Shown in pieces: positions 11,991 through 61,853 of a stretch of 64,000 bases of DNA. Positions within the stretch are counted from its first letter, which is position 1. The number at the start of each line of letters is the position of its first letter. The notes under the pieces were generated by a model. That model did not search any database. It was not told where the DNA came from and worked only from the letters and a program-made list of their open reading frames with translations. Where the stretch lies: IMG/VR virus record IMGVR_UViG_3300042691_055965, positions 165,189 to 229,188 of that record; one strand, written 5' to 3'. A program made the translations under genes and the position numbers.

Positions 11991-13187
11991 ATGAAAATAT
12001 TTGTACAAATTGCATCTTATCGTGATCCTGAACTTTTACCAACTATTAGGGATTGTATCAATAAGGCAAAATACCCTGAAAATTTAACTTTTGGTATCTG
12101 TTGGCAACGTGACGAAACAGAAACTTTGGAAGAATTTTTAAATGATTATAGATTTAGAATATTAGATTATCATTGGAGTGAAAGTAAAGGGCTGTGTTGG
12201 GCTCGAAGTGAAATACAAAAACTTTGGAAAGGGGAAGAATATACTCTACAATTAGATTCACATCATAGGTTTTTGAAAAATTGGGATGAAGAATTAATCG
12301 AAATGATGAACATGACAGGTTCGAAAAAACCAATAATTTCAACATATGCTGGAATGTATCAACCATCAGACGACAAGTTATTAAATTTTGAACCTTATAA
12401 AATGGTGGCATCTAATTTCACACCAGGTGGTACTATACTTTTTAGACCTCACGCAATCCCAAACTGGGAAACATTGGAAAAACCAATACCTGCAAGATTT
12501 GTCAGTGGACACTTTTTTTTCACAATTGGTAAACACTGTGAAGAATATAAATATGATCCAAACATATATTTTGCTGGTGATGAAATTAGTCTATCGATTC
12601 GTTCATTTACATTAGGTTATGATTTATTTCACCCATATAAGACAATTATTTGGCACGAATACACAAGGGAAGGTAGAACAAAACACTGGTCGGATTTCAA
12701 TGAGGAAAATAAAAATAAAGGTGTTGTTGAAAAACAATGGTGGGAAATGGATAATGAATCCAAAAGAAGATTGAGACATATGTTGCAAGAAGAAGATAAT
12801 AATATTGATCTTGGAATTTATGGGTTAGGAAATGAAAGGACACATAAAGAATACGAAGATTATGCTGGTATAAATTTTAGACTTAAAAAACTTCACCCCG
12901 AAACGTTAAAAGGTACAAATCCACCAATTAATGATACTACAGAATGGTATTTGGAAGAAGAAAAAACATATACCTATACTTTAGAAATACCCAAAACTGA
13001 AAATTTTAAATTCATATATATTGGTATAGAAAATGAAAAAGGTGATGTTTTATACAGACAAGATTTATTAGAATATCAAAATAAATTAGACATAACAATT
13101 AAAAGTTTTTCCAAACCACACAAATGGATTTATTGGGTAAACGATATCGATGGGAATTGGATTAATAGGGTAGATACAAATTTATGA
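11991..13187 (+). CDS. glycosyltransferase, Pfam GlcNAc / GT60 (Gnt1-like) family
   Basis: IFVQIASYRDPEL, GLCWARS..Q.L..GEEY.LQLDSH.RF..WD, FAGDEISLSIR..T.GYD motifs. Confidence 0.8.
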   Translation: MKIFVQIASYRDPELLPTIRDCINKAKYPENLTFGICWQRDETETLEEFLNDYRFRILDYHWSESKGLCWARSEIQKLWKGEEYTLQLDSHHRFLKNWDEELIEMMNMTGSKKPIISTYAGMYQPSDDKLLNFEPYKMVASNFTPGGTILFRPHAIPNWETLEKPIPARFVSGHFFFTIGKHCEEYKYDPNIYFAGDEISLSIRSFTLGYDLFHPYKTIIWHEYTREGRTKHWSDFNEENKNKGVVEKQWWEMDNESKRRLRHMLQEEDNNIDLGIYGLGNERTHKEYEDYAGINFRLKKLHPETLKGTNPPINDTTEWYLEEEKTYTYTLEIPKTENFKFIYIGIENEKGDVLYRQDLLEYQNKLDITIKSFSKPHKWIYWVNDIDGNWINRVDTNL

Positions 13188-16507: not shown

Positions 16508-18157
16508 ATGGCAGGATATACTGGAAATACTTGTGATATTTTAACCATCTTCCCAATGGGTTTGATTTGTAGTTCAACAAATGCGTATACTCCATTTACA
16601 AATGATGGTGCGATAACATTGTATATTACAGGAGGTACACCACCGTATACAATAAATTGGAGTAATGGTGCTCATTCACAAAATTTAACAAACTTACAAT
16701 CAGGAAATTACACTGCCACGGTAATTGATTACTATGGGGATTTTACAGCAACAACTACTTGTAATGTTGGATTTGATACTTTTTATTTAGAAAAATTCAC
16801 AAATTGTTTGGATTCAAACAATCAAATTTATTTTTTAGCAAATATTAATAATCAATACCAAGTTGATAAAGTTTATTCTTTAAGTTCACAACTTGGATGT
16901 TGGATTAGTGAAGGTTTACTTTTATATAGTGCTGAAACATATAGTAATTTTACAGCAACAACGGTTTCGGGACCTTTTGATACTTGTCCTGAATGTTTAC
17001 CAACAGTACCTGTGATTTTTAATACTTCTGGATTGTGTTTGACACTAACATCTTTTAATGTTGTAACACAAACACAATATTATTCAGGAGGTACAATCAA
17101 TGGATATCCGTCATGGACATCCAACACATCGAATGAAGTTATTTATTTTGATAACACACAATCTAAATGGAAAGTTTCTGGATGGACGGGTGGAGGTATC
17201 CCACAACTTCAATCAATACAAAGTCCACCAATCGGAGCTTGGACTGTAGTAGGGTTACCACAGTTATTGGCAGGTAATACTGCGGTTGCCGTAACACAAG
17301 GGGATTGTCAAGCAGTAATTGTTGCAAATATCAGTAGTACACCACCAAGTTGTGAAGGTGCAACCGATGGTTATATAAATGTAACATCGGTTATTGGCGG
17401 TACACCACCATATACATATTCATTAGTGAATGATCAAAATTTTTATCAAATATCAAATATATTCAATGGTTTGTCAGAAGGTGGTTATACAGTATATGTT
17501 CAAGACGTTTTTGGAAATATCACTATAAGTCAAGTTAATTTGAATTCTTTAGTTAGCCCAACATTATATACGTTGAATTTAGTTGTGCAACAAGTAAATC
17601 TTGGTAACAACTCGACAACAAACCAAACTAGAAATTGGACTTACCAAGTTACAGTATCACCAGCACTTCCAATAGGTAAACAGATCAATTTTGATATAAC
17701 ACACGTATCAACATCAATTTATGGAACAACCAACAATGGTTCACCTGTATTATCTTATACCCAATCAACAGGAACTACAGGTGGTGGACAATACTTAACA
17801 AGTACAACACCAACAACCACTTCTACTTCAGCAACAACTGTTGCATGTACCACATTAAATAATTACACACAACACGTAACAACTACAACCATAAGACAAT
17901 ATAACGCAAGGATAACAGGTACATTTGGAACGGATAGTGTTTTTGGTAACGTCACACAAAGTGTAACTGTTATAAATGGTGGAACACCATGTGCAGTATT
18001 CGGTAATATTAATGATAGTGTTTCAATAACAAATATACAATTGGTAAACCAAGCACCGTGTGAATTGGTGAACACAACCGTTCAACCCGTGTCTTTCGGT
18101 GTTTCTAAAACGGGAACACCTGGAATAGTTGGAAGTAATGTAAATGTGAGTGGATAA
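16508..18157 (+). CDS. SprB-repeat virion protein
   Basis: GGTPPYTINWSNG..NL..GNYT and GGTPPYTYSL..FNGL..G.YTVYVQD. Confidence 0.7.
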   Translation: MAGYTGNTCDILTIFPMGLICSSTNAYTPFTNDGAITLYITGGTPPYTINWSNGAHSQNLTNLQSGNYTATVIDYYGDFTATTTCNVGFDTFYLEKFTNCLDSNNQIYFLANINNQYQVDKVYSLSSQLGCWISEGLLLYSAETYSNFTATTVSGPFDTCPECLPTVPVIFNTSGLCLTLTSFNVVTQTQYYSGGTINGYPSWTSNTSNEVIYFDNTQSKWKVSGWTGGGIPQLQSIQSPPIGAWTVVGLPQLLAGNTAVAVTQGDCQAVIVANISSTPPSCEGATDGYINVTSVIGGTPPYTYSLVNDQNFYQISNIFNGLSEGGYTVYVQDVFGNITISQVNLNSLVSPTLYTLNLVVQQVNLGNNSTTNQTRNWTYQVTVSPALPIGKQINFDITHVSTSIYGTTNNGSPVLSYTQSTGTTGGGQYLTSTTPTTTSTSATTVACTTLNNYTQHVTTTTIRQYNARITGTFGTDSVFGNVTQSVTVINGGTPCAVFGNINDSVSITNIQLVNQAPCELVNTTVQPVSFGVSKTGTPGIVGSNVNVSG

Positions 18158-29961: not shown

Positions 29962-30552
29962 ATGAGTAGAAAAAAAACTAATACAAAACAAAAAAAAGAC
30001 CCCCAATATATGTTATTTGTTTTTGGGGATTTAGCCGAATCAAGTGAGGTTACACAATACATTTCTAGTCAATTACTTACAATTGTTAGTTCACAGTTTT
30101 TGAAATATACTTATGGTGAATATGGAATTGTTTTCAACTTTAGAAGTGATGAAACATTCGATGACTTGAAAGAATATGTTGATATGGCTCTTTCAGATTT
30201 AACCGACCAGTACTTCTTATTAGAAACAACAAAAAACTTTGAAATAAAAATGCCAAGAAAGATGAAAAAAGATTTCTTGAACATAGACAACCAATTAAGT
30301 AACGATATACCAATTGCGGGTTCTATTTCGAAAGAAGAAAAACCTAAATTTAATTGGGATGAGAAAAAAATTATTACTTTTGATTTTTTATTACCGGTAA
30401 TCAATCAAAATTTTGAAAACATAACAGAAGAAATAGTAGAAGAAGAACCGTCAATAGACGACATTTTAGATAAAATATCAGAGAGAGGAATAGATTCATT
30501 AACAAAAAGAGAAACAGAAATTTTAGAGAATTATGGAAAGAGAAAGAATTGA
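29962..30552 (+). CDS. hypothetical protein with C-terminal DUF6576-like motif
   Basis: IDDILDKISERGIDSLTKRETEIL; start placed after the TAAATTTG promoter at 29931. Confidence 0.55.
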   Translation: MSRKKTNTKQKKDPQYMLFVFGDLAESSEVTQYISSQLLTIVSSQFLKYTYGEYGIVFNFRSDETFDDLKEYVDMALSDLTDQYFLLETTKNFEIKMPRKMKKDFLNIDNQLSNDIPIAGSISKEEKPKFNWDEKKIITFDFLLPVINQNFENITEEIVEEEPSIDDILDKISERGIDSLTKRETEILENYGKRKN

Positions 30553-31348
30553 AGAAGTAAAAAACAGTAATCCTTTAAATCAGGATGAAATCCAAATTTA
30601 TTTGAAAGACATTCGAAAGTTAAAAGTAATGACACCTGAAAGGGAAAAGATTCTTTCAGAAAGAATCACGTCAAATAATTGTACAGCAAGAGAAAGGGAA
30701 CTTATCTATAAAGAACTGTTAGAGGGTAATTTGAGATTCGTGATTACTGTTGCTAAACAATATCAAAATCAAGGAATTGATTTATCTGATTTAATTGCTG
30801 AAGGTAATTTTGGTTTAATGAAGGCTATCAAAAACTTTGATTGGAGTAAAAAGAATCGTTTTATTTCATACGCAGTTTGGTGGATTAAACAATCTATCTT
30901 ACAATCACTTAATGAAAATTCAAGAACAATCAGACTACCAGTGAACGTTGTTCAAGATATGCAAAAAGAAAAAAGACAAATCGAAAATACAAATAAAGAA
31001 TTGTCTAGTAAGTTTGCAAATCTACCTAAAATTATAGATTTGGATATGCACATCAATGAAGATGGTGATACATTGATTGATGTTATAAAAAATGAAAATG
31101 TTGAATCCCCTGATGAAATTTTTTCTACACAAGATACTTTAAAAGAAAAAATGATGTCAATTATGTCTGTTTTGGATGAAAGAGAAAGAACAATAGTTGA
31201 AGATTACTATGGTTTGTCAGGAACACCAAGAACATTAGAAGACATTGGTATGGACTTTGGTTTAACAAAAGAAAGGGTAAGGCAAATTAAAGAAAAGGCA
31301 CTTCGCAAGTTAAGAAACGAATGTTCTGAATTATTTGATTATTTATAA
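30533..31348 (+). CDS. RNA polymerase sigma-70 factor (RpoD/RpoS-like)
   Basis: YLKDI (1.2), NLRFVI..AK.Y, DLI.EGN.GL, FISYAVWWI (region 2), TLEDIG..FGLTKERVRQI (region 4). Confidence 0.95.
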   Translation: MERERIEEVKNSNPLNQDEIQIYLKDIRKLKVMTPEREKILSERITSNNCTARERELIYKELLEGNLRFVITVAKQYQNQGIDLSDLIAEGNFGLMKAIKNFDWSKKNRFISYAVWWIKQSILQSLNENSRTIRLPVNVVQDMQKEKRQIENTNKELSSKFANLPKIIDLDMHINEDGDTLIDVIKNENVESPDEIFSTQDTLKEKMMSIMSVLDERERTIVEDYYGLSGTPRTLEDIGMDFGLTKERVRQIKEKALRKLRNECSELFDYL

Positions 31349-38729: not shown

Positions 38730-39354
38730 TCTTAAGTCTGTATAGTCTTTTTTTGTCAAATCCTTTTTCTTCTAAAACGCTATATATCCATTTTCTTTGT
38801 GTTATAGAAATATCACGTACAAACAACCCATCCATTCTATTATTTTCCATAAAATGACTTTGAAGTATATCTAAAAACCTTTCAGATTCATCAGAATCTT
38901 TTAATGAAAAAAGGGATACTGATGTTTCTATCTGTACACACAGTTTGTTATTAAGGGTGTAGACACTTTTAAATTCTTTATCATTCAGATACTTTTTTAA
39001 AAATTCATCGAACGAAATCTTTTTTTGTTCTTGCCAATCGAACAGAAGTTCTTCTACTTTATATTTTTTTATATCCAAAAAGACAAATTCGGGATTATCT
39101 AAGTTCACTGGTAAGTTCCTACCTAAGTCATCTGTTAAAAATAAAGAAGTCTGTATTTTAGTTTTATTTGTTAAAATTGCTAATTCGTAGTCTACAGGGG
39201 TTGCATTTTCAATTTTCTTATCAAAACAAATTTTATCATTTTCTTTAATTAATTGATTGAATTTTTCCCTGGCACTTTTTTCTGTTGCATAACGTTTGAT
39301 AATTTTTCTTTTTTTCTTATTCTTAAATAAAACTATTAAATAATTGTTTGCCAT
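38710..39354 (-). CDS. hypothetical basic protein (minus strand)
   Basis: 214-aa ORF with no competing plus-strand ORF. Confidence 0.7.
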
Positions 39355-40333
39355 GAAAAATTATTATGAAATATTAGGTGTTAATGAAAGTGCTTCGCAA
39401 GACGATATAAAAAAAGCCTATAGAAAATTAAGTAAAAAATATCATCCAGATGTAAACCCCAACGGGGAAGAAAAGTTCAAAGATATTACTGAAGCTTATG
39501 AAGTATTGGGTGATGAAAATAATAGAAGAAAGTATGACAACCGTGGATCTGGTGGTTTTGACATCAACAGTATGTTTGAACAAATGATGGGTGGAGGTAT
39601 GAGACAAAAACCAAAGGCACCAGATAAAGTTATGGAAATAGTCATTTCGCCACTTGATTCTTATTTCGGGGTTAAAAAAGACATCGATGTAACGTCACTT
39701 GATTGTTGTGGTGGGTGTAATGGTAATGGTGGACAAAGAAACACTTGTAATCACTGTAAAGGTTCGGGTTACATCACACAAAGATTTGGTATGGGACATT
39801 TTATGCAACAAATCCAAACAGGATGTCCTATGTGTAAAGGACAGGGGTCAGTAATATCCGTTGCCTGTAACACTTGTGGAGGTAGAGGTGTGACACCAAA
39901 AAAAGAAAAATTGAATGTAACAATACCTTCTAATGTCGATAATGGTGATTTTATGCGAGTAAAAGGAAGGGGTGATTATAATTTGAATGTAAGGGATAAA
40001 GGTGATATCATATTAAAGGTGATTATGGCAAATGATAACGACTTTGAAAAAATTGGAAGAGATTTGGTTTTCAAAATGAAGGTGACGCCTATTGATATTC
40101 TTATGGATACACCAATAGAAATTCCACATCCTGATGGAAAATTAAAAATACATTTACCTGATGTGTTTGATAGTGAAAAACCGTTGAGGGTTTCTAATAA
40201 AGGATACAAGTATTCTGATAGAAATGGTGACTTATATATAAAAGTTACTGTCACTAATAATAAAATTAGCAACAGTAAAATTGTGGAAGGATTAAAAGGA
40301 TTGTTAGAACAAACTGAAAATGTTCCTGATTAA
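39353..40333 (+). CDS. dnaJ: DnaJ chaperone
   Basis: J domain with HPD, G/F linker, four CxxCxGxG repeats, C-terminal domain. Confidence 0.92.
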
Positions 40334-43175: not shown

Positions 43176-44816
43176 ATGGAAACAATATACAGACAGGAAA
43201 AAGTTTTATACTACACCGAGTTATTCAAAAATTACAATAAATTCCCTATTGAAACTAAACCAAAACCAGATAATGATTTTGACATTGAATACTATATAAA
43301 TTTCAAAAAAGGTTTTACTTATGAAAAGGGCAATGATACAGAAGAATGTTTTGTAAAAAACTACTCAAACCCATTTGCTTCTATTAGTATGTTAAGAAAA
43401 ACATTTGTAGTAGAAAAAAATGAAGACAAAATTTCTATGAAATTGTTTTCATACAAAAGATCGAGAGGATTAGAAAAAAAGTATTTCACAGTAAGAAGGG
43501 AAGTTAATTTTCTAACATTTTCATTTAAGACAAAAATGTTTTATAGTGGCTTCACAAATTTTAAGAAAAAAATAAAGTTAGGTGGAAGATTTAGAGTCAA
43601 TAGGACTAATTTGGTTAGTTTGGAAGTTTTTAATAATTTGACAAAAACATTTATAGATGATGATGTAAAAAAAGATGTGTTTAACAATTTCCTTGATGAA
43701 ATAATTAAAAGATTGAATTTGAAATTACAAGTTGATACTGACAATATTCCATCGAAATACTACCAAATTATTTTATTGAACAATAAAATTAAATTTCCTG
43801 ATTCTTACTTCAAATTTGCAGGTTTTTATTTGACAAAAAAAATCTTAAAAAACTTTGATTTCAATTTAGTAACATGGTTTATGAAAACAAATGAAATGAA
43901 AGGTACTAAAATCAGAAGATTACTTAATCGATATGATTTTTTAGATTTGAGCAATATTAAATTTTATTATGATTTATTAGGTGTGGATTTGTTCAATAAA
44001 ATCAAAGATGATGTTTTTTTGACTTCGACTTTAAGTGATGTGTACAATGGATCGAATTTTAGTACTCCTATTATAATATCAAAAAAAGAAAAAGAAAATA
44101 TTGTTAGTATTTTGAATACAACAACCACTAGTGAATTTACATTTTCGTTATTGGATCATTTTCAGTTCAAAAAAGATTTAGAAAAATATGGTGAATTTGT
44201 GAAAATAAATGCAAAAACACATGATGAATTTGTGGTTGAACATTCTGAATGGTCGTCATTGTTACAATCATACAGAACGGGTGTGGTAGATAGGTTTTAT
44301 GGTGATGATGCATATTTGGTAGAAAAACCAATCAAATACAATGATGAAACTTTTTATCCTGTATTACTAAAGAATACTGAACAATATGAAAATGAATCCA
44401 TGGTTCAGAAAAATTGTGTTAGAACTTACAGTGAAAAACCACATTGTTTTATAGTTTCACTAAGAAAGGGTGATAAAAATTCAAACATACGGGCAACGAT
44501 AGAGTTTCAATTTAGAAAAAAAGAACTTTTAAGAATACAGACATTAGGTAGATTCAATAAATTATTGTCAGAAGAATGGAATAGTCCGGTTGAAGAATTA
44601 ACAAATTTTGCAAATTATTTGTATCAAAAAGAATTTATCAAATTACCACGAATGACTAAAAAATACATGAATGGAAAAGTGAACGTATTACAATCTTCAT
44701 TTTTTGAAGTAGAAACAGAAAAGGGGGTAGTTCATAGAATGACACCAAGTTGGAGTGGACAAAACACTTTACAAGAAATAATAGTGGATTATCATTTTTT
44801 TGACGAACTGTATTAA
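43176..44816 (+). CDS. PcfJ-like domain protein
   Basis: E.ES..QKNCV.TY..FIVSLR..RATIE..Q..GRFN. Confidence 0.7.
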   Translation: METIYRQEKVLYYTELFKNYNKFPIETKPKPDNDFDIEYYINFKKGFTYEKGNDTEECFVKNYSNPFASISMLRKTFVVEKNEDKISMKLFSYKRSRGLEKKYFTVRREVNFLTFSFKTKMFYSGFTNFKKKIKLGGRFRVNRTNLVSLEVFNNLTKTFIDDDVKKDVFNNFLDEIIKRLNLKLQVDTDNIPSKYYQIILLNNKIKFPDSYFKFAGFYLTKKILKNFDFNLVTWFMKTNEMKGTKIRRLLNRYDFLDLSNIKFYYDLLGVDLFNKIKDDVFLTSTLSDVYNGSNFSTPIIISKKEKENIVSILNTTTTSEFTFSLLDHFQFKKDLEKYGEFVKINAKTHDEFVVEHSEWSSLLQSYRTGVVDRFYGDDAYLVEKPIKYNDETFYPVLLKNTEQYENESMVQKNCVRTYSEKPHCFIVSLRKGDKNSNIRATIEFQFRKKELLRIQTLGRFNKLLSEEWNSPVEELTNFANYLYQKEFIKLPRMTKKYMNGKVNVLQSSFFEVETEKGVVHRMTPSWSGQNTLQEIIVDYHFFDELY

Positions 44817-44818
44817 TA

Positions 44819-45154
44819 ATGGAAGAAAAAGAAGAAATACCTAGCCACATTTTCGATAGATACCGTTCTATAAACAAATTTGAGTTTCATCCAAACATAG
44901 TAAGAACTAAAAACATAATAAGGGATGGTGTTGACGTATTAATCAAAAAAAACAAGTTACTTTGGACTAACTCAAATTATGATAAAGGGTATATACACAA
45001 TGAAGGTTTAATAGTTTGGGGAGTTGAATTTTTGTATTTCAAAAAATTAGATAATGACACTACTTATAAATTATACATTTTAACACAAGATATTACTAAA
45101 GTTGAAATGTTAATTTTCGGATTGAATAAATATTTCACAATAGATAAAATATGA
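44819..45154 (+). CDS. hypothetical protein
   Basis: 111-aa ORF. Confidence 0.6.
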   Translation: MEEKEEIPSHIFDRYRSINKFEFHPNIVRTKNIIRDGVDVLIKKNKLLWTNSNYDKGYIHNEGLIVWGVEFLYFKKLDNDTTYKLYILTQDITKVEMLIFGLNKYFTIDKI

Positions 45155-45438
45155 AAGTTGTTATTTTGTTCACAATGCAGGGTTGCCCCTTTTGTGGTAT
45201 GATTAAAGATGAATTTGAAAAAAATGATATCGACTATATTGAAAGAGATATCCAAGAACACAGAGAAGAATATAATGCGTTTAGTGAGGCAACAGAAAAC
45301 GATTTTCTTCCAGCATTTATGTTAATGACTTTTACAGATAAAGATGAGGTGCACAACGTCAAATTATGTGCACCTGATAGAGATTTTGAAGATATATTTG
45401 GTGGTGTTGAATTGGTAAAAGAATATCTATCAATATAA
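45151..45438 (+). CDS. glutaredoxin-like protein
   Basis: FTMQGCPFC, LPAF cis-Pro motif. Confidence 0.85.
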   Translation: MKVVILFTMQGCPFCGMIKDEFEKNDIDYIERDIQEHREEYNAFSEATENDFLPAFMLMTFTDKDEVHNVKLCAPDRDFEDIFGGVELVKEYLSI

Positions 45439-46311
45439 TATAAGTTCAGAAACCAAGTCCAAATTTTGCCAGCAAGCTTGTTCATTTGTTGGGGTTAGTA
45501 CTTTTAGTAAATTACATTCGGAAAGATTCAAGTTATCATAAATTTCATTCATACGAAATGGAAACACATCTAGTATCAAAGATTCTAACCATTCTTGGTT
45601 TACTATAATTTTACTACCATTCAAGTTTAACGATACGTTTAAGTTATCTATTTCATCATAAAAAGAATTAGATTTTATTCCAATAACCAATTTTGACGAA
45701 ATCCCTTTTTGAAATAAATGGTTTTTAATGTAAAGAAGAAGGATGTGATAAAGTTTTTCATAGTTCATTGATAATCCATAAAATCTATCAGAAACGTAAA
45801 TTTCATTAGATAAATCTACTTTCAGTGTAGAGTAGTTTGGAAACTTTTCTTTAATTAAATAGTTAACTTTTTCAACATCCTTTGCGTCGCAATCAAACAA
45901 AATGGTTGAATTTTGTTCATCCAGTTGGCAATTAAAAAATAAGTCATTAGTCGAATGATACTTTACAAATTCATCAAAAGAATCATGTAAAGTATTTTTT
46001 TCAAAAACCTCTGACAAATTTAAAAAATTGAAAGAAAATGGTGAATTATATAGTAAAGTGTCAATTACCCTTAAATTTTCTACAGATTTTTTTGTTGATG
46101 TTTTTAGGTAGTTAGAAAATATATCAGTAATATTTAATACCGTGGTTGACGTAGTCCGCCCTTTTACTACAAAAAAATTCCCGACATTTACCACTGAAAT
46201 TTCAGTTTTAACGTCGGGAGATTCTTTTTGTAATTCGTCAACAATAAGATTTGCAAAAATATTACATAGGTTCTTACCGTCAAGGTAATTATAAAAACAT
46301 TTTAGATTCAT
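45430..46311 (-). CDS. degenerate S-adenosylmethionine synthetase (MetK)-like protein
   Basis: N- and C-terminal segments align by eye with MetK, but GHPDK, GAGDQG and GGGAFSGKD are absent. Confidence 0.5.
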   Translation of the reverse strand: MNLKCFYNYLDGKNLCNIFANLIVDELQKESPDVKTEISVVNVGNFFVVKGRTTSTTVLNITDIFSNYLKTSTKKSVENLRVIDTLLYNSPFSFNFLNLSEVFEKNTLHDSFDEFVKYHSTNDLFFNCQLDEQNSTILFDCDAKDVEKVNYLIKEKFPNYSTLKVDLSNEIYVSDRFYGLSMNYEKLYHILLLYIKNHLFQKGISSKLVIGIKSNSFYDEIDNLNVSLNLNGSKIIVNQEWLESLILDVFPFRMNEIYDNLNLSECNLLKVLTPTNEQACWQNLDLVSELILY

Positions 46312-46391: not shown

Positions 46392-46529
46392 TTATTTTTT
46401 ACTATAATATTTTTCTACAATCTTTGTTACAACATTCTTTACAGATTCATTTGTTTGTTGTTGAGTCTGTACTGGTTGTGGTTGAACCGTTTGGTTACCG
46501 TTGTTTTTATTTTTGCATCCGCAGCCCAT
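46392..46529 (-). CDS. small MGCGCK peptide (45 aa, not in ORF track)
   Basis: MGCGCKNKNNGNQ...NESVKNVVTKIVEKYYSKK; minus-strand TATTTATA at 46560-46567. Confidence 0.6.
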   Translation of the reverse strand: MGCGCKNKNNGNQTVQPQPVQTQQQTNESVKNVVTKIVEKYYSKK

Positions 46530-46615
46530 GATATTATTTTTTATTAGTTTATGTTTTTATATAAATATTTAATAATATAAAATAGTCATTTGTCAATAAC
46601 TTATATTTATATAAT

Positions 46616-48603: not shown

Positions 48604-48795
48604 ATGGGTTTTAATAAAAGATTTTTGAATAAAAAAAGTATAATCAATAATGTTCATGATATTTTAAGTTACCTTAATGTAGATGCTTTTTACATTAACG
48701 ATGACTTTTCCTATGATGTTTATCGATTGTACATTGAAGGTAAATCAGAAGAAGAAATACTAAAATACATTAATGAAAATAAAGATGAAGATTAA
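48604..48795 (+). CDS. hypothetical protein
   Basis: 63 aa after TTGACT-17-TATTTT. Confidence 0.55.
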   Translation: MGFNKRFLNKKSIINNVHDILSYLNVDAFYINDDFSYDVYRLYIEGKSEEEILKYINENKDED

Positions 48796-50002
48796 ACTTG
48801 AATACGTGTGGCTTGACGGGTACACACCAGAACCAAACCTTAGAAGTAAAGTTAAAATAGTTAATCATGGCGATGTTAAAGACGCTATGATTACAGGTAA
48901 ATTTCCTATGTGGAATTTTGACGGGTCGTCCACCAATCAGGCGCAAACAGATAGTTCAGACTGTTTATTAAAACCAGTTCGACATTATATGATTGATACT
49001 TTGTCGACGGTATATGTTTTTTGTGAAGTTTTAAATGCAGATGGTACGCCACATCAATCAAATACACGTTCCAAATTAATTGGTGAAGAAAAAAATATTT
49101 GGTTTGGTTTTGAACAAGAATATTTTATTTTCGATAGAAAGAACAAATGTATTTTGGGGCATGACGAAAATAACTTGGAACCGCAAGGTAAATATTACTG
49201 TGGTGTTGGTGAATATGTTGCTGGTAGAAGTTTTGTAAATGAACACCTACATATGTGTTTGAATTATGGAATCGACATCACAGGAATAAATGCAGAAGTT
49301 GCACTTGGACAATGGGAATATCAAGTGTTTTCAAAAGGAAAATTAAAGGCGGGTGATGACTTATGGATGACTAGATATTTCTTACATAAAATTGCAGAAA
49401 AATACGATTACAAAATTGAGTTACATCCAAAACCTTTACAAAAAGGTGAATGGAATGGTTCAGGACTTCACACCAATTTTTCGACAGAAAAAATGAGGGA
49501 AAAAGGTGGTGAAGAATATTTCAAATCATTATTTTCAAGTTTAGAAACACGACATTGGAAACATATAGAAGATTATGGTTCTTCGAATGATTTAAGACTT
49601 ACTGGAAAATTTGAAACACAATCAATAAACAAATTCAGTTGGGGTATTTCAGATAGGGGTGCATCAATTAGGGTTCCACAAACAACAGCAAATGAATGGA
49701 AGGGATATTTGGAAGACAGACGACCTGCATCAAACGCCGACCCATATAAAATCATATATCAATTATGTGAATCAATCAAAAATGCTGAAGCAATTAATGA
49801 TATAAAACACAAAATGAATTTCAAAGGAAACTTTGATGAAATTATCAATAGATACAACGGTGTGCTTCAAACCGAAGAGTTATTGGAAGAATATCAAAAT
49901 GATGATAATTTTGAAGTGGAAAAAGAAACTATGGTAGAAAATAGAAATAATATATCAACAACAGAAATAGAATTTAATTTAAATGGAAATGACACTAAAT
50001 GA
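48773..50002 (+). CDS. glnII: glutamine synthetase, type II-like (auxiliary metabolic gene)
   Basis: LEYVWLDG, WNFDGSST, GFEQEY, GINAEV..GQWEYQ, HPKP..WNGSGLHTNFS, RLTG..ET, RGASIRVP, YLEDRRP.SN.DPY. Confidence 0.92.
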   Translation: MKIKMKIKLEYVWLDGYTPEPNLRSKVKIVNHGDVKDAMITGKFPMWNFDGSSTNQAQTDSSDCLLKPVRHYMIDTLSTVYVFCEVLNADGTPHQSNTRSKLIGEEKNIWFGFEQEYFIFDRKNKCILGHDENNLEPQGKYYCGVGEYVAGRSFVNEHLHMCLNYGIDITGINAEVALGQWEYQVFSKGKLKAGDDLWMTRYFLHKIAEKYDYKIELHPKPLQKGEWNGSGLHTNFSTEKMREKGGEEYFKSLFSSLETRHWKHIEDYGSSNDLRLTGKFETQSINKFSWGISDRGASIRVPQTTANEWKGYLEDRRPASNADPYKIIYQLCESIKNAEAINDIKHKMNFKGNFDEIINRYNGVLQTEELLEEYQNDDNFEVEKETMVENRNNISTTEIEFNLNGNDTK

Positions 50003-51260: not shown

Positions 51261-53507
51261 ATGAAAATTATAATCACAGAATCGCAATACAGACAAATAA
51301 TTAAAGAATCAGGTATCAGGGATATTAAAAAAATCGCAGAAAGATACCCTAAAGCAAAAATTTACTTCCATCAAGACTTAGATGGTGTAACTACCGCAAT
51401 TGCAATGAAAAACTATCTTGAACAAAACGGCATCAAAGTAGTTGATGCTGAAGTGATTCAATATGGTGATAAAGAGTTTTCAGTTAAAAAACTTGACGCA
51501 GAAGGTGATGTGATGCCAGTGTTAGTTGACTTTGCACACGGCAAACCAATGTTTGTCATTCATACCGATCACCACGATACACAAGCTGGTGTTGAATCAG
51601 GAACTGCAACAAGTTTCAAGGCATCTAGATCGAATGTTGAAACAATATCCCAAACGATATCACCAAAAGATATTTTTCCATCTGATGACTTACTTCTTAT
51701 ATCTACTGTCGATTCTGCCAATTTCCTTGCACATGATATAACTTTTGACATGGTAATGAATTATATTTTCAAAATGGATAAGGATCAATCACTTCAAAGA
51801 AATAAAATGATGATGGGATTGGTGACAAACAAATTGTTACTTGCATTTAAAAACAAACCAAAATTTTTAGAAACATTGGTTATGAAAAGTAACCCATCTT
51901 TGTTAAGTATTTTAAATAATATTAGAGATATAATGAAGGTGGAAGGTTATGCTGAACCTGAAGAACTAGAACAAAACAAACAGAATTATATTGAAAAAAT
52001 GAAAGAATTCCCTAAAGTACAGGGTAAAGTTATTGTACAGTATGGTGGGGGTTCTATGACAAAACCAGGTTCATATGATAGATATACGCCGTTTAAGAAT
52101 AATCCTGATGCTGACTTCTTGGTAATTGCTTGGCCGACAGGAATTGTTCAAGCTTCTTGTAATGCATATAAAGGTGAACGTTCACTTAAAGGTGTTAATC
52201 TTGGTGAAATGAAAGATGAGGTTCTTAAAAAGTTTGAACCGGAATTAAGTAAATTAAAAATAAGTTTTGGTACATTAAAAAGAGTTTCTGAATCAAAGGC
52301 TGGTGAGGGTTCCGTTGGTTTTACTCTCAAAGATTTTTTAGCGATATATGGAAATGCACCATCATTGAAGATTGAAGGAAATAAAGAAGATACATTAAGT
52401 GAAATAAATAAACTTTCAGATAAGTTATATTCCACTTTAACTTTCGAAGAAAAAATGAATTTGGAAAAAGCCAGTGTTAATGGTATGGATGTCGTGAAAG
52501 CAAATTCAGGTGGACATAAATGTATTACAAACATTTCTGGTTTAAGTTATCTTTACACAAACATTAGAAGGTATAAAGATGACGAATTAAAGATGATACA
52601 AAAATATGGTGGATCAAACAATTTTGTTTTGGACATCCAAAGAAAGTTGAAGTCGATGAAAAAAAATCAAGAACTTACTGAAAAGCAAAAAACTGCAGCA
52701 GTAAACCAAATCAAAAAAGAAATAGAATCAGGAAGGTATAACCCAGACATAGACAATAAGGTAACATCATATGTAGATATGATTAAGAAAATTCAACAAG
52801 AGTTTGTAAAAGTACTTGAAAGTTATATAGAAAAAGAATCCATCAACGAAAATGTCGTTGAAAAAAAAAAGTACTATATAGACGATAGTGACATTAAAGG
52901 TGCGGGAAAAGGGGTATTTGCAAAAACAAATATCAAAAAAGGTGAACGTATCGGATTGCTTCACACAATAAAAAAAATGGGTGTCAATTATGATTTTACT
53001 GAATTGGGTAAAATGCATAATCATAGTGGTAAACCCACTTGTCATAATGAAAAAGTTGGAAATAAAAGATACTTAGTCGCATCCAAAGATTTAAAAAAAG
53101 GTGAAGAACTGACAACCAATTACAGATTACAACCAGATTTGGAACAACCAAAAGAAGGTTGGGGTAATTTGAAAGAAGAAAAAGAATTTAAACCACACAT
53201 AGATGGTTACCGTACATATTCACCATTCAAAGATTTGCCATACATAATAGTCAAAGGGAATGGTATTGACTGTGATAATATTGTTCATGACTTGGTTTTA
53301 GTAGGTGACAATAAAAAGGTTAAATACTGTAAAAAAAACACTGGAGTTTATAAAATTACAGGAGCAAGTAAAATTGTAGAATTACCTGTTGATAAAACTG
53401 AAGATGTTGAAGAAATATTTAAAAGTCCTGAAAATGTGGAACTGTGGGTTAAAGAAAAAATTAAATCAGTGGATAAAAAAGGGGAAATTAGAAGAATGAT
53501 GAATTAA
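51261..53507 (+). CDS. leader + DHH-family phosphoesterase + SET domain + unknown C-terminal domain
   Basis: HQDLDG, VD, DHH, GGH; then S.IKGAGKGVFA..IKKGE, NHS, A.KDLKKGEELT.NY. Confidence 0.8.
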   Translation: MKIIITESQYRQIIKESGIRDIKKIAERYPKAKIYFHQDLDGVTTAIAMKNYLEQNGIKVVDAEVIQYGDKEFSVKKLDAEGDVMPVLVDFAHGKPMFVIHTDHHDTQAGVESGTATSFKASRSNVETISQTISPKDIFPSDDLLLISTVDSANFLAHDITFDMVMNYIFKMDKDQSLQRNKMMMGLVTNKLLLAFKNKPKFLETLVMKSNPSLLSILNNIRDIMKVEGYAEPEELEQNKQNYIEKMKEFPKVQGKVIVQYGGGSMTKPGSYDRYTPFKNNPDADFLVIAWPTGIVQASCNAYKGERSLKGVNLGEMKDEVLKKFEPELSKLKISFGTLKRVSESKAGEGSVGFTLKDFLAIYGNAPSLKIEGNKEDTLSEINKLSDKLYSTLTFEEKMNLEKASVNGMDVVKANSGGHKCITNISGLSYLYTNIRRYKDDELKMIQKYGGSNNFVLDIQRKLKSMKKNQELTEKQKTAAVNQIKKEIESGRYNPDIDNKVTSYVDMIKKIQQEFVKVLESYIEKESINENVVEKKKYYIDDSDIKGAGKGVFAKTNIKKGERIGLLHTIKKMGVNYDFTELGKMHNHSGKPTCHNEKVGNKRYLVASKDLKKGEELTTNYRLQPDLEQPKEGWGNLKEEKEFKPHIDGYRTYSPFKDLPYIIVKGNGIDCDNIVHDLVLVGDNKKVKYCKKNTGVYKITGASKIVELPVDKTEDVEEIFKSPENVELWVKEKIKSVDKKGEIRRMMN

Positions 53508-61245: not shown

Positions 61246-61271
61246 AAAAAAGTCGGTTATACCGACTTTTT
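61246..61271. terminator. bidirectional terminator
   Basis: aaaaagtcggt-tat-accgacttttt between convergent genes. Confidence 0.75.
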
Positions 61272-61853
61272 CATTAATAAGTTGTTTAGTTTATAATATC
61301 CAATAAATACCAAACCACCAATAATACCGTAAAAGTGTCCTACTGCGGTAAAGTTTAATTCAGGAGAAGGTTTTAATGAGATTAATGTGTCAAAAATAAA
61401 GACAACAGAAAGGAATTTTAATTTATTATCATTAGAAAAGAAAAGAAAAACTGTCACTATTGTTGCAACAAAACCTGAACTACCCACCAAAGAATCATCA
61501 CCTTGTAAAACAAATAGAACGTTTATTAATATGACGTTAACGACAATACTTATTACCAACATTATCAGGTAGTTAGTTTTACTAATCATATTTTCAAGTT
61601 GAGATGAAAATATTATAAAGAAAGAAAGATTCCACAACAAATGGGTTGGTTCTTGAGCATGAAATAATGGGTAAGTTAAAACTTGATGAAGTTGAAATTT
61701 TGGAGAATCAAATGAATGTAAAGCAAGTGAATTCATCAACACCTGACTTATTGGTATTATAACAAAAATGGACAACAAGTAACAATAAACTAAAATTTTT
61801 GAAATTTTTGTAGTAATGTTATCTGACTTTCTGATAAAAATTATGTTTTTCAT
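61257..61853 (-). CDS. rhomboid-family intramembrane serine protease
   Basis: TY..FH....HL..N, GSSG catalytic Ser, H..G...G catalytic His; about six TMs. Confidence 0.8.
   Translation of the reverse strand: MKNIIFIRKSDNITTKISKILVYCYLLSIFVIIPISQVLMNSLALHSFDSPKFQLHQVLTYPLFHAQEPTHLLWNLSFFIIFSSQLENMISKTNYLIMLVISIVVNVILINVLFVLQGDDSLVGSSGFVATIVTVFLFFSNDNKLKFLSVVFIFDTLISLKPSPELNFTAVGHFYGIIGGLVFIGYYKLNNLLMKKSV

What the first reader, a model, noticed from the sequence alone, without database searches (positions are those of the whole stretch)
45430..46311. Catalytically dead MetK (SAM synthetase) look-alike
Seen: KNLCNIFANLIVDELQKESPDVKTEISVVNVGNFFVVKGRTTS parallels the MetK N-terminus (DKICDQISDAILD..DP.ARVA.E.....V.V.GEITT). 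The C-terminal YIKNHLFQKGISSKLVIGI..LILDVFPFR..I...LNL..WQNLDLVSEL parallels MetK AKNIVAAGLA..C.IQ..FDLRP..I...LDL..WEK.D. The catalytic GHPDK, GAGDQG and GGGAFSGKD motifs are absent. Known: MetK is an obligate oligomer, and lowering SAM is a phage anti-restriction strategy (T3 SAM lyase). Inference: a pseudo-enzyme that poisons or tunes host MetK, or a repurposed SAM binder. The window also carries three DNA MTases and a SET domain.
Basis: partly seen in the sequence, partly recalled or inferred. Interest (0 to 1): 0.7.

Follow-up and report, generated by a model that had tools for sequence, protein, structure and literature searches.

The report
Dead, trimmed MetK-fold phage protein
A freshwater T4-like jumbo phage carries a shrunken, strongly conserved copy of the enzyme that makes S-adenosylmethionine; it keeps the enzyme's shape but has lost every part needed to make SAM, so it is a new non-catalytic offshoot of a very conserved enzyme family, and its job is unknown.

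Summary

Profile-profile alignment to MetK is colinear (E 3e-6). A rare 338-343 aa clade bridges the two: it passes Pfam's MetK thresholds and sits in a similar gene neighbourhood in related contigs.

At most one of 16 MetK catalytic or ligand residues may survive. The GAGDQG/gating loop, the loop carrying D238/R244 and the GGGAFSGKD loop are deleted. The protein cannot be a SAM synthetase.

It is not decaying. dN/dS is 0.10-0.15, there are 216 clusters at 50% identity, and it holds the same inverted gene slot in all 44 related phage loci. Shorter relatives (248 aa) keep the fold.

The genome is a T4-like freshwater jumbo phage. Neither it nor three nearly complete relatives have a true metK, and all carry DNA methyltransferases.

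The proposed function (poisoning or tuning host MetK, or binding SAM) is untested; the one complex prediction gave no answer. Indirect evidence argues against SAM starvation and against SAM binding in the old pocket. My best reading is an exapted binding scaffold derived from a phage metK, partner unknown.

The parts
45430..46311 (-). CDS of the 293-aa MetK-fold pseudoenzyme (P0001)
46270..46284 (-). Codons 10-14 (L-D-G-K-N), the position of MetK's GHPDK loop. The catalytic His and the Mg-binding Asp are replaced.
   Evidence: Alignment mapping. The loop is invariant or nearly invariant in the close family but variable in the wider family.
46048..46053 (-). Codons 87-88, the junction of a 26-residue deletion that removes MetK's Q98, gating loop and GAGDQG (D118)
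   Evidence: hhalign gap; residue mapping.
45769..45801 (-). Codons 171-181 (I-Y-V-S-D-R-F-Y-G-L-S), the remnant of MetK's KIIVDTYGG strand and loop. It holds the family's most conserved polar cluster (S174, D/E175, G179, S181). The 16-residue loop before it, which carries D238 and R244 in MetK, is deleted.
45760..45765 (-). Codons 183-184, the junction of a 12-residue deletion that removes the GGGAFSGKD triphosphate loop (K265, K269)
   Evidence: hhalign gap; mapping.
45556..45591 (-). Codons 241-252 (W-L-E-S-L-I-L-D-V-F-P-F), a conserved C-terminal-domain helix. It is homologous to the MetK segment that ends in FDLRP. S244 and D248 are invariant in 76 family members.
46392..46529 (-). Co-oriented upstream small ORF (45 aa; N-terminus MGCGCK, Q-rich linker, conserved ...VEKYYxKK tail). 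With the MetK-like gene it forms the only minus-strand pair in this block. It is not specific to MetK-like genes elsewhere.
   Evidence: Found upstream of the gene in all 40 core-family loci L003-L042 and in the bridging clade. It is called as a gene in a relative. In a capped IMG/VR sample, only 21 of 99 such ORFs are followed by a MetK-like gene.
46604..46611 (-). TATAAATA (T4 late-promoter-like octamer), 82 nt upstream of the small ORF's ATG
   Evidence: Present 82-102 nt upstream in 21 of 21 distinct upstream regions, against about 0.03 expected per 110 nt. Genome-wide evidence that the phage uses this motif as a promoter is weak.
45151..45438 (+). Glutaredoxin gene, convergent with the MetK-like gene and overlapping its 3' end by 9 bp. 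This is a conserved neighbour; a functional link is not shown.
   Evidence: Pfam PF00462. The same convergent pairing occurs in the loci that reach far enough, including the distant L044 and L045.

Best explanation
The gene descends from a phage-borne metK that has become a pseudoenzyme.

Shown:
- It keeps the three-lobed MetK architecture.
- It has lost the catalytic His, the Mg/K and triphosphate ligands and the methionine and adenine contacts, mostly through deletion of the loops that line the MetK active site.
- It is kept under strong purifying selection as a fixed-position gene of a widespread clade of uncultured freshwater T4-like jumbo phages.
- These phages have no true metK but do have several DNA methyltransferases.

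Inferred:
- It works by binding, not by making SAM.
- The constrained polar residues (N17, T53, D84, Y88, S174, D/E175, S181, K/R186) lie close in sequence to the positions of the old active site. In MetK that region is also the dimer face.
- A hydrophobic stripe (V41, F46, V48, I83) appears to persist on that sheet face.
- I therefore think this face still engages a partner, either a second copy of itself or another protein. The partner is unknown; host MetK is one candidate (about 0.2).
- The segment equivalent to MetK residues 129-233 is dispensable. It is variable in the family and is cut down to a hairpin in the 248-aa relative.
For: Fold:
- AF2 pLDDT 89.8.

Homology:
- hhalign of the family against a MetK profile gives E 3e-6 and is colinear.
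- The bridging clade P0252/P0272/P0273 is hit by the family profile (E 4e-8; hhalign E 4e-12).
- That clade passes Pfam gathering scores for S-AdoMet_synt_N and S-AdoMet_synt_C and hits genuine phage MetKs by tblastn (6e-19).
- P0272 has the MGCGCK small ORF upstream. Both P0272 and P0273 have glutaredoxin and PcfJ-like genes a few kb downstream on the opposite strand.

Loss of catalysis:
- 0 of 16 key residues are kept; D271 may be retained as E185.
- Three loops are deleted.

Selection and breadth:
- dN/dS median 0.147, maximum 0.286.
- At least 338 sequence homologues in metagenomes, clustered at 90% identity, and 216 clusters at 50% identity.
- The same inverted slot in 44 of 44 loci.
- The DNA occurs in many freshwater, lake and plankton metagenomes.

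Phage identity: a T4 gp23 capsid protein, E 4e-64.

No true MetK in G000 or in three relatives 96-100% complete.

Conserved polar sites lie near ex-active-site positions: 8 of 12 against 22.5% expected, post-hoc p about 0.001.

Against: - No direct evidence for any binding partner or for oligomerisation; the only complex prediction returned no answer.
- No coordinates were available, so residues were placed on faces by alignment parity, not in 3D.
- The local alignment is uncertain by a few residues around positions 122-127 and 171-186; the direct and transitive mappings differ.
- About half of the universally conserved residues (N17, G51, D175, G179, K186, F250, W281) align with positions that are also conserved in the MetKs I aligned. 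They may be fold determinants rather than a functional site.
- The close family has a nearly invariant new motif at the GHPDK position, which could mean a new catalytic or ligand site rather than pure binding.
Confidence: 0.72

Rival explanations
1. Dominant-negative or tuning subunit of host MetK. The pseudo-MetK pairs with a host MetK monomer through the flat sheet face. Each MetK active site needs residues from both subunits, so the heterodimer would be inactive or altered, and SAM supply would change during infection.
For: - It is a true MetK homologue that retains the sheet architecture.
- The constrained polar residues sit near the old interface and active site.
- The phage has no metK of its own, so host MetK is the only SAM source.
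- There is precedent for phage proteins that bind and inactivate MetK: T3 SAMase (PMC8406200; bioRxiv 10.1101/2023.02.27.530186; PDB 8bb1 appears among the structural hits).
- From general knowledge, dead paralogues of oligomeric enzymes often regulate the live enzyme (for example the AdoMetDC prozyme).
Against: - The phage clade conserves SAM-consuming DNA methyltransferases and a SET-domain protein, so starving SAM looks self-defeating.
- Positions aligned to the MetK interface and active-site residues E42 and E55, and their strand neighbours, are highly variable: entropy 2.4-3.6 bits at positions 37, 39, 43, 50, 52 and 87. Host MetK's face is nearly invariant (established knowledge).
- The loops that make much of the MetK interface are deleted.
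- The complex prediction gave no answer.
Confidence: 0.2
2. A neo-functionalised pocket. The remodelled cleft at the former active site binds a new small ligand or catalyses a new reaction, probably in a homodimer.
For: - In the close family the loop replacing GHPDK (N8, L10, D11, G12, K13, N14, C16, N17) is invariant or nearly so. So are many Asn, Asp, Lys and Ser residues (N42, N89, N127, D140, K164, D166, S168, S174, D175), down to about 42% identity.
- Conserved polar residues cluster near ex-active-site positions.
Against: - The loop motif is not conserved in the wider family or in the 210-250 aa relatives. A function shared by the whole family cannot depend on it.
- No known nucleotide- or phosphate-binding motif remains.
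Confidence: 0.15
3. A late-expressed virion-associated or structural protein that merely reuses a stable fold; it might be packaged and delivered into the next host.
For: - A T4 late-promoter-like TATAAATA sits upstream of the small-ORF/MetK-like pair in 21 of 21 distinct loci.
- The pair is transcribed opposite to all its neighbours, which suggests separate timing.
Against: - Genome-wide enrichment of TATAAATA upstream of genes is weak: 16% against a control mean of 6% and a control maximum of 17%.
- The neighbours are metabolic or DNA-modification genes, not structural ones.
- No expression or proteome data; no RNA run was listed.
Confidence: 0.1
4. It is still a working, very divergent SAM synthetase.
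For: The whole-length MetK fold. The phage's methyltransferases would benefit from it.
Against: - H14, D16, K17, E42, E55, Q98, D118, D163, K165, F230, D238, R244, K245, K265 and K269 are all substituted or deleted in both alignment routes.
- About 90 residues of active-site loops are missing.
- Genuine phage MetKs keep GHPDK and are 345-400 aa long.
Confidence: 0.02
5. A decaying relic with no function.
For: Loss of all catalytic features; progressive shortening across the family (384, 338, 293, 248 and 210 aa).
Against: - dN/dS 0.10-0.15 with no stops or frameshifts in 35 gene copies.
- Conserved over 216 clusters at 50% identity.
- Confidently foldable models.
Confidence: 0.01

Closest known systems
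Bacterial MetK / methionine adenosyltransferase (e.g. E. coli MetK, PDB 1XRA, 7LOO; U. urealyticum 6RK7)
   Same: - Colinear profile alignment.
- Shared scaffold motifs: the first helix after the GHPDK position, the G-x-T hairpin, the VDTYGG-like strand, the FDLRP-like segment and the PWE Trp.
   Different: - 293 aa rather than about 384 aa, and about 12-14% identity.
- GHPDK replaced; the gating/GAGDQG loop, the D238/R244 loop and the GGGAFSGKD loop deleted; 0-1 of 16 catalytic or ligand residues kept.
- Fails the Pfam MetK models.
- Found only in viral or metagenomic contigs, with none in 185,579 species genomes.
- Evolves fast, whereas MetK is among the most conserved enzymes (general knowledge).
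Genuine phage-encoded MetK (Streptococcus Javan prophages, Erysipelothrix phage phi1605, Microcystis phage Mel-JY01)
   Same: A phage-borne MetK homologue. It probably represents the ancestral state, an auxiliary gene feeding phage methyltransferases; one sits next to an adenine methyltransferase in Javan630.
   Different: These keep GHPDK and full length (345-400 aa), are 41-63% identical to E. coli MetK, and are annotated as active enzymes. The window's protein is not detectably similar to them by BLAST.
The 338-343 aa bridging clade (P0252, P0272, P0273; unnamed metagenomic phage proteins)
   Same: - P0272 has the MGCGCK small ORF upstream, and all have glutaredoxin and PcfJ-like genes downstream.
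- Hit by the family profile.
- Also lacks most catalytic residues; only H14 and K265 of 16 are kept.
   Different: - Still recognisable as MetK by Pfam and BLAST.
- About 45 residues longer.
- Rare: 3 clusters.
- Followed by a ClpP gene, which is absent at this position in the window.
T3 SAM lyase (SAMase), a functional comparison only
   Same: A phage protein aimed at the host SAM economy. It binds MetK and blocks it (PMC8406200; bioRxiv 10.1101/2023.02.27.530186).
   Different: An unrelated fold, and a real enzyme (SAM cleavage), found in a phage without DNA methyltransferases. No evidence here for MetK binding or an effect on SAM.
Pseudoenzyme regulators such as the trypanosomatid AdoMetDC prozyme (from general knowledge, not tested here)
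   Same: A catalytically dead homologue of an oligomeric enzyme of SAM and polyamine metabolism, retained under selection.
   Different: The prozyme is known to pair with its live paralogue within the same genome. Here the only live homologue is the host's, and no pairing has been shown.

Membership tests
MetK/MAT superfamily (homology and fold) | Three intertwined beta-alpha-beta-beta-alpha-beta repeats forming the MetK fold | tested here: met
   [not shown]
MetK/MAT superfamily (homology and fold) | Sequence match to Pfam S-AdoMet_synt_N/M/C (PF00438, PF02772, PF02773) at gathering score | tested here: not met
   No Pfam hit for P0001 even at E 10. Some family members give sub-threshold PF02773 hits, best 21 bits against a cut-off of 25. 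The bridging clade passes. Profile-profile E 3e-6.
Active SAM synthetase (EC 2.5.1.6) | GHPDK loop (His14 acid catalyst, Asp16 Mg ligand, Lys17) | tested here: not met
   The aligned residues are L10-D11-G12-K13-N14. His aligns with Asp and Asp with Lys. K13 could equal Lys17 if the loop register is shifted by one residue.
Active SAM synthetase (EC 2.5.1.6) | Gln98, the gating loop and GAGDQG (Asp118) | tested here: not met
   26-residue deletion between residues 87 and 88.
Active SAM synthetase (EC 2.5.1.6) | Triphosphate and metal ligands: Lys165, Asp238, Arg244, Lys245, GGGAFSGKD (Lys265, Lys269), Asp271 | tested here: not met
   16- and 12-residue deletions remove most of them, and the rest are substituted. 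Only Asp271 may survive, as E185, which is present in 36 of 76 members.
Active SAM synthetase (EC 2.5.1.6) | SAM synthesis from ATP and methionine | not testable with these tools
   Needs an enzyme assay.
MetK-type oligomer (tight dimer through the sheet face) | Homodimer, or heterodimer with MetK | tested here: inconclusive
   Complex prediction with a Flavobacterium MetK returned no answer, because the phage chain was not folded (pLDDT 34). By alignment parity the outward sheet positions are partly hydrophobic and conserved (F46, V48, I83) and partly very variable.
Pseudoenzyme (dead homologue kept by selection) | Loss of catalytic residues together with purifying selection | tested here: met
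   residues; dN/dS 0.10-0.15; breadth and fixed gene position.
Acidic DNA-mimic anti-restriction proteins (Ocr/ArdA-like), considered | Extreme negative charge | tested here: not met
   pI 4.8 and net charge -12 on 293 aa. This is similar to MetK and to the phage's own proteome, median pI 5.3.

The most novel reading that the evidence does not exclude
A phage has turned its own former metK into a dead homologue that docks onto the host's MetK, or onto the phage's own methyltransferases, to control where SAM is made or used during infection. That would be a homologue-derived prozyme or anti-enzyme for the cell's main methyl-donor supply. It would also be the first non-catalytic radiation of the MetK fold, with stepwise domain loss (384, 338, 293, 248 and 210 aa).
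Probability: 0.2. Interest if true: 0.8.

Novelty: new variant of a known kind. Interest (0 to 1): 0.6.

Why it matters
MetK is one of the most conserved enzymes known. To my knowledge its fold has a single function, and I found no paper describing a MetK-like phage protein. A large, fast-evolving, non-catalytic branch in abundant freshwater jumbo phages shows that this fold can be exapted. The series from 384 to 210 aa gives a natural view of which parts of the fold are dispensable.

SAM supply is a known battleground between phages and SAM-dependent defences such as Type I restriction-modification and BREX. These phages methylate their own DNA heavily, so a MetK-derived binding protein is a concrete, testable candidate for a new way of managing host SAM metabolism.

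If the function turns out to be unrelated to SAM, the family is still a cleanly defined, uncharacterised, widely conserved gene of a widespread phage clade.

Tried and rejected
- Direct sequence searches with P0001 found nothing: Pfam, PHROGs, PDB by phmmer and by profile, and tblastn against 50,697 phage records. A distant relative also had no match in cultured phage records.
- A scan of one genome for each of 185,579 prokaryote species with the family alignment found no relative. The gene is therefore not seen as a prophage gene, and IMG/VR's 'provirus' label for this record looks doubtful.
- Complex prediction of P0001 with Flavobacterium johnsoniae MetK gave no answer. The engine folded the phage chain at pLDDT 34, and the controls were not run. 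This is not evidence either way.
- ESM Atlas feature search returned only low-overlap hits, to unnamed clusters and to M16/M44 peptidases (at most 118 of 256 shared features). I treated it as noise.
- No RNA sequencing run was listed for the gene, so expression timing is unknown.
- The look-up of encoding contigs for the 88%-identical relative returned no DNA. dN/dS was computed on other pairs instead.
- DNA-mimic idea rejected on charge.
- I considered that the upstream MGCGCK peptide is a dedicated partner of the MetK-like protein. I rejected it as specific: in a capped IMG/VR sample, only 21 of 99 such ORFs are followed by a MetK-like gene. 54 are followed by an unrelated protein family of about 349 aa and 13 by a family of about 435 aa. 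Neither resembles MetK by hhalign, probability at most 0.3%.
- A search for an intact MetK in the same slot found none. No MGCGCK-linked downstream gene gave a strong MetK-profile hit. A scan with the bridging-clade alignment found one unrelated true MetK.
- TATAAATA as a proven late promoter is left open; genome-wide enrichment is weak.
- Host identification was not pursued. SprB-repeat proteins hint at a Bacteroidota host, but that is inference only.

Full report
**The object**

Window 45430-46311 (minus strand) is an ATG-started ORF of 293 aa. It is one of very few minus-strand genes in a long run of plus-strand genes. Its 3' end overlaps, convergently, the 3' end of a glutaredoxin gene at 45151-45438. 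A 45-aa ORF lies 80 nt upstream on the same strand (46392-46529).

The window is the last 64 kb of a 229-kb IMG/VR virus record. That record encodes a T4-type major capsid protein (PF07068, E 4e-64) and no NCLDV capsid. It is therefore a large T4-like tailed phage, about 30% G+C. The same DNA occurs in many freshwater, lake and plankton metagenomes.

**Checking the observation**

Direct sequence searches find nothing in Pfam, PHROGs, PDB or cultured phage genomes. The protein does have a large metagenomic family:
- at least 338 homologues, clustered at 90% identity;
- 216 clusters at 50% identity;
- 43 IMG/VR loci, on contigs up to 317 kb.

An AlphaFold2 model built on 31 homologues is confident (pLDDT 89.8, pTM 0.88) and shows three beta-alpha-beta-beta-alpha-beta repeats. 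Every structural search returns MetK:
- Foldseek against PDB and Swiss-Prot: E about 1e-14, TM 0.65-0.73 by query, covering residues 1-290 against MetK 1-390.
- AFDB clusters: the named top hits are MetK or MAT.
- ESM Atlas: the single family set reported for the 99 nearest models is MetK.

**Sequence-level homology**

A 76-member family profile aligns colinearly with a MetK profile (E. coli plus seven phage MetKs). The alignment covers residues 13-290 against MetK 17-377, with E 3e-6 and 88% probability.

A rare 338-343 aa clade (P0252, P0272, P0273) bridges the gap:
- The family profile finds it (E 4e-8; hhalign E 4e-12).
- It passes Pfam's gathering scores for the MetK N and C domains.
- It aligns to MetK at E 6e-29 and hits real phage MetKs by tblastn at 6e-19.
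- P0272 has a small MGCGCK ORF just upstream. Both P0272 and P0273 have glutaredoxin and PcfJ-like genes a few kb downstream on the opposite strand.

Homology to MetK is therefore established, not just likeness of fold.

**Is it dead?**

I mapped 16 E. coli MetK residues that, from the literature as I recall it, are catalytic or ligand-binding: H14, D16, K17, E42, E55, Q98, D118, D163, K165, F230, D238, R244, K245, K265, K269 and D271. The E. coli sequence has the expected residue type at each of these positions, which checks my numbering.

In P0001 none is conserved by either the direct or the transitive alignment. The one possible exception is D271, which may survive as E185.

The losses are mostly deletions of active-site loops:
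- 26 residues covering Q98, the gating loop and GAGDQG;
- 16 residues covering D238 and R244;
- 12 residues covering GGGAFSGKD.

GHPDK becomes L-D-G-K-N. The local register is uncertain by a few residues in two regions, but no register restores the active site. The bridging clade keeps only H14 and K265, so it is dead too. I conclude that SAM synthesis is lost. This is shown by alignment, not by assay.

**Is it functional?**

Yes, by several measures:
- Pairwise dN/dS (NG86) among 35 intact gene copies is 0.10-0.15 for unsaturated pairs (median 0.147, maximum 0.286).
- In all 44 loci the gene holds the same inverted slot. The gene order fam1, fam2, then the MetK-like gene in the opposite direction, then glutaredoxin, fam7 and PcfJ-like recurs in nearly all core-family loci. 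The convergent redoxin neighbour persists even in the most divergent relatives.

The segment equivalent to MetK 129-233 is thus dispensable. The parts equivalent to MetK's central and C-terminal domains are the conserved unit.

**Clues to mechanism**

- Conserved polar positions across the wide family (N17, T36, T53, D84, Y88, S174, S181, K/R186, S244, D248, W281, D/E289) lie near ex-active-site positions more often than expected. The count is 8 of 12 against 22.5% expected, post-hoc p about 0.001. In MetK that region is both the active site and the dimer face.
- Several of these residues align with positions that are also conserved in the MetKs I aligned, so they may be fold determinants.
- By alignment parity, the outward face of the first sheet keeps a hydrophobic stripe (V41, F46, V48, I83). 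The positions aligned with E42 and E55, and their strand neighbours, are very variable at 2.4-3.6 bits.
- The close family has a nearly invariant new motif at the GHPDK position. The wide family does not.
- The protein is only mildly acidic (pI 4.8), like the rest of the phage's proteins, so it is not an Ocr-like DNA mimic.

**Context that bears on the SAM idea**

The window has three DNA methyltransferases and a SET-domain protein. Five related phage records all have N6/N4 methyltransferases. Neither this record nor three relatives that are 96-100% complete have a true metK.

These phages therefore consume SAM and depend on the host's MetK. A plausible history is that an ancestral phage metK, of the kind still found intact in 138 phage records, lost catalysis and was exapted. 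The same context makes a T3-like SAM-starvation role unattractive.

The heterodimer test with a Flavobacterium MetK gave no answer.

**Verdict**

The functional inference (poisoning or tuning host MetK, or binding SAM) is untested.
- I give the MetK-partner idea about 0.2.
- A remodelled ligand or catalytic pocket: about 0.15.
- A late or virion role: about 0.1.
- Residual SAM synthetase activity: about 0.02.

My best-supported statement is that this is a MetK-derived pseudoenzyme acting as a binding scaffold through the former active-site and dimer face, with its partner unknown.

I found no description of such a family in Pfam, PHROGs or the searchable literature. It is a new non-catalytic variant of a known enzyme family.

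Noticed in passing
window 46392-46529 (-); also L003-L042 just upstream of the MetK-like gene; L054:7819-7944; L059-L178: A widespread family of small phage ORFs (about 24-60 aa). It has an invariant N-terminus M-(G/S)-C-G-C-K, a Q/T/P-rich linker of variable length, and often a conserved tail ...(V/I)(Q/N)ES(V/I)KK(I/V)VEKYYNKK. Some loci carry two tandem copies. A capped IMG/VR scan gave 120 stretches; 114 were complete small ORFs. They are followed by different genes in different lineages: a MetK-like gene in 21 of 99, an unrelated family of about 349 aa in 54, and a family of about 435 aa in 13. G000 has one copy. The function is unknown; the CGC motif next to a glutaredoxin gene may hint at thiol or metal chemistry.
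   Followed up: partly
window 46604-46611 (-) and the equivalent sites in 21 distinct loci: TATAAATA, the T4 late-promoter consensus, lies 82-102 nt upstream of the small ORF in 21 of 21 non-identical upstream regions. A second conserved block (...AAATATTTATATA...ATAAAC) lies 20-45 nt upstream. Genome-wide, TATAAATA is only weakly enriched upstream of genes: 14 of 86 sites against a control mean of 6%.
   Followed up: partly
window 45151-45438 (+) against 45430-46311 (-): The MetK-like gene and a glutaredoxin or thioredoxin gene are convergent with overlapping or abutting 3' ends. This holds in essentially all loci, including very divergent ones (L044, L045) where the other neighbours differ. 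No terminator-like hairpin lies between them. It could be a functional link or could allow antisense interference.
   Followed up: partly
G000:C1:63818-65377 (outside the window): A T4 gp23-type major capsid gene. The record is labelled 'provirus' by IMG/VR, yet the MetK-like family has no relative in 185,579 prokaryote species genomes. The label is probably wrong, or reflects host-like genes.
   Followed up: partly
window 48773-50002 (+): A phage-encoded glutamine synthetase (Gln-synt_N plus Gln-synt_C, 409 aa), conserved in 34 of 44 related loci. It is an auxiliary nitrogen-metabolism gene.
   Followed up: no
window 51261-53507 (+): A 748-aa protein that combines a weak N-terminal DHH phosphoesterase-like hit with a C-terminal SET methyltransferase domain. 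This is an unusual combination for a phage.
   Followed up: no
window 6563-9268, 16508-18157 (+); 11991-13187 (+): Large proteins with SprB repeats; SprB is the Bacteroidota gliding adhesin (my knowledge). There is also a eukaryote-type GlcNAc glycosyltransferase (PF11397, E 2e-67). The SprB repeats hint at a Bacteroidota host.
   Followed up: no
window 39344-40333 (+), 30533-31348 (+), 61257-61853 (-): The phage encodes a full DnaJ (J domain, zinc-finger domain and C-terminal domain), a sigma-70 family factor and a rhomboid-like membrane protease.
   Followed up: no
L053:9048-9928; L054:9021-9689: In the phages that carry the 338-343 aa bridging MetK-like gene, it is followed directly by a ClpP protease gene. 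In L053 a ribosomal protein S21 gene comes next.
   Followed up: no
window 43176-44816 (+): A 546-aa protein with a sub-threshold PcfJ-like match (23.8 bits against a cut-off of 25). It is conserved two genes from the MetK-like gene in 34 of 44 loci, and also near the bridging clade.
   Followed up: no
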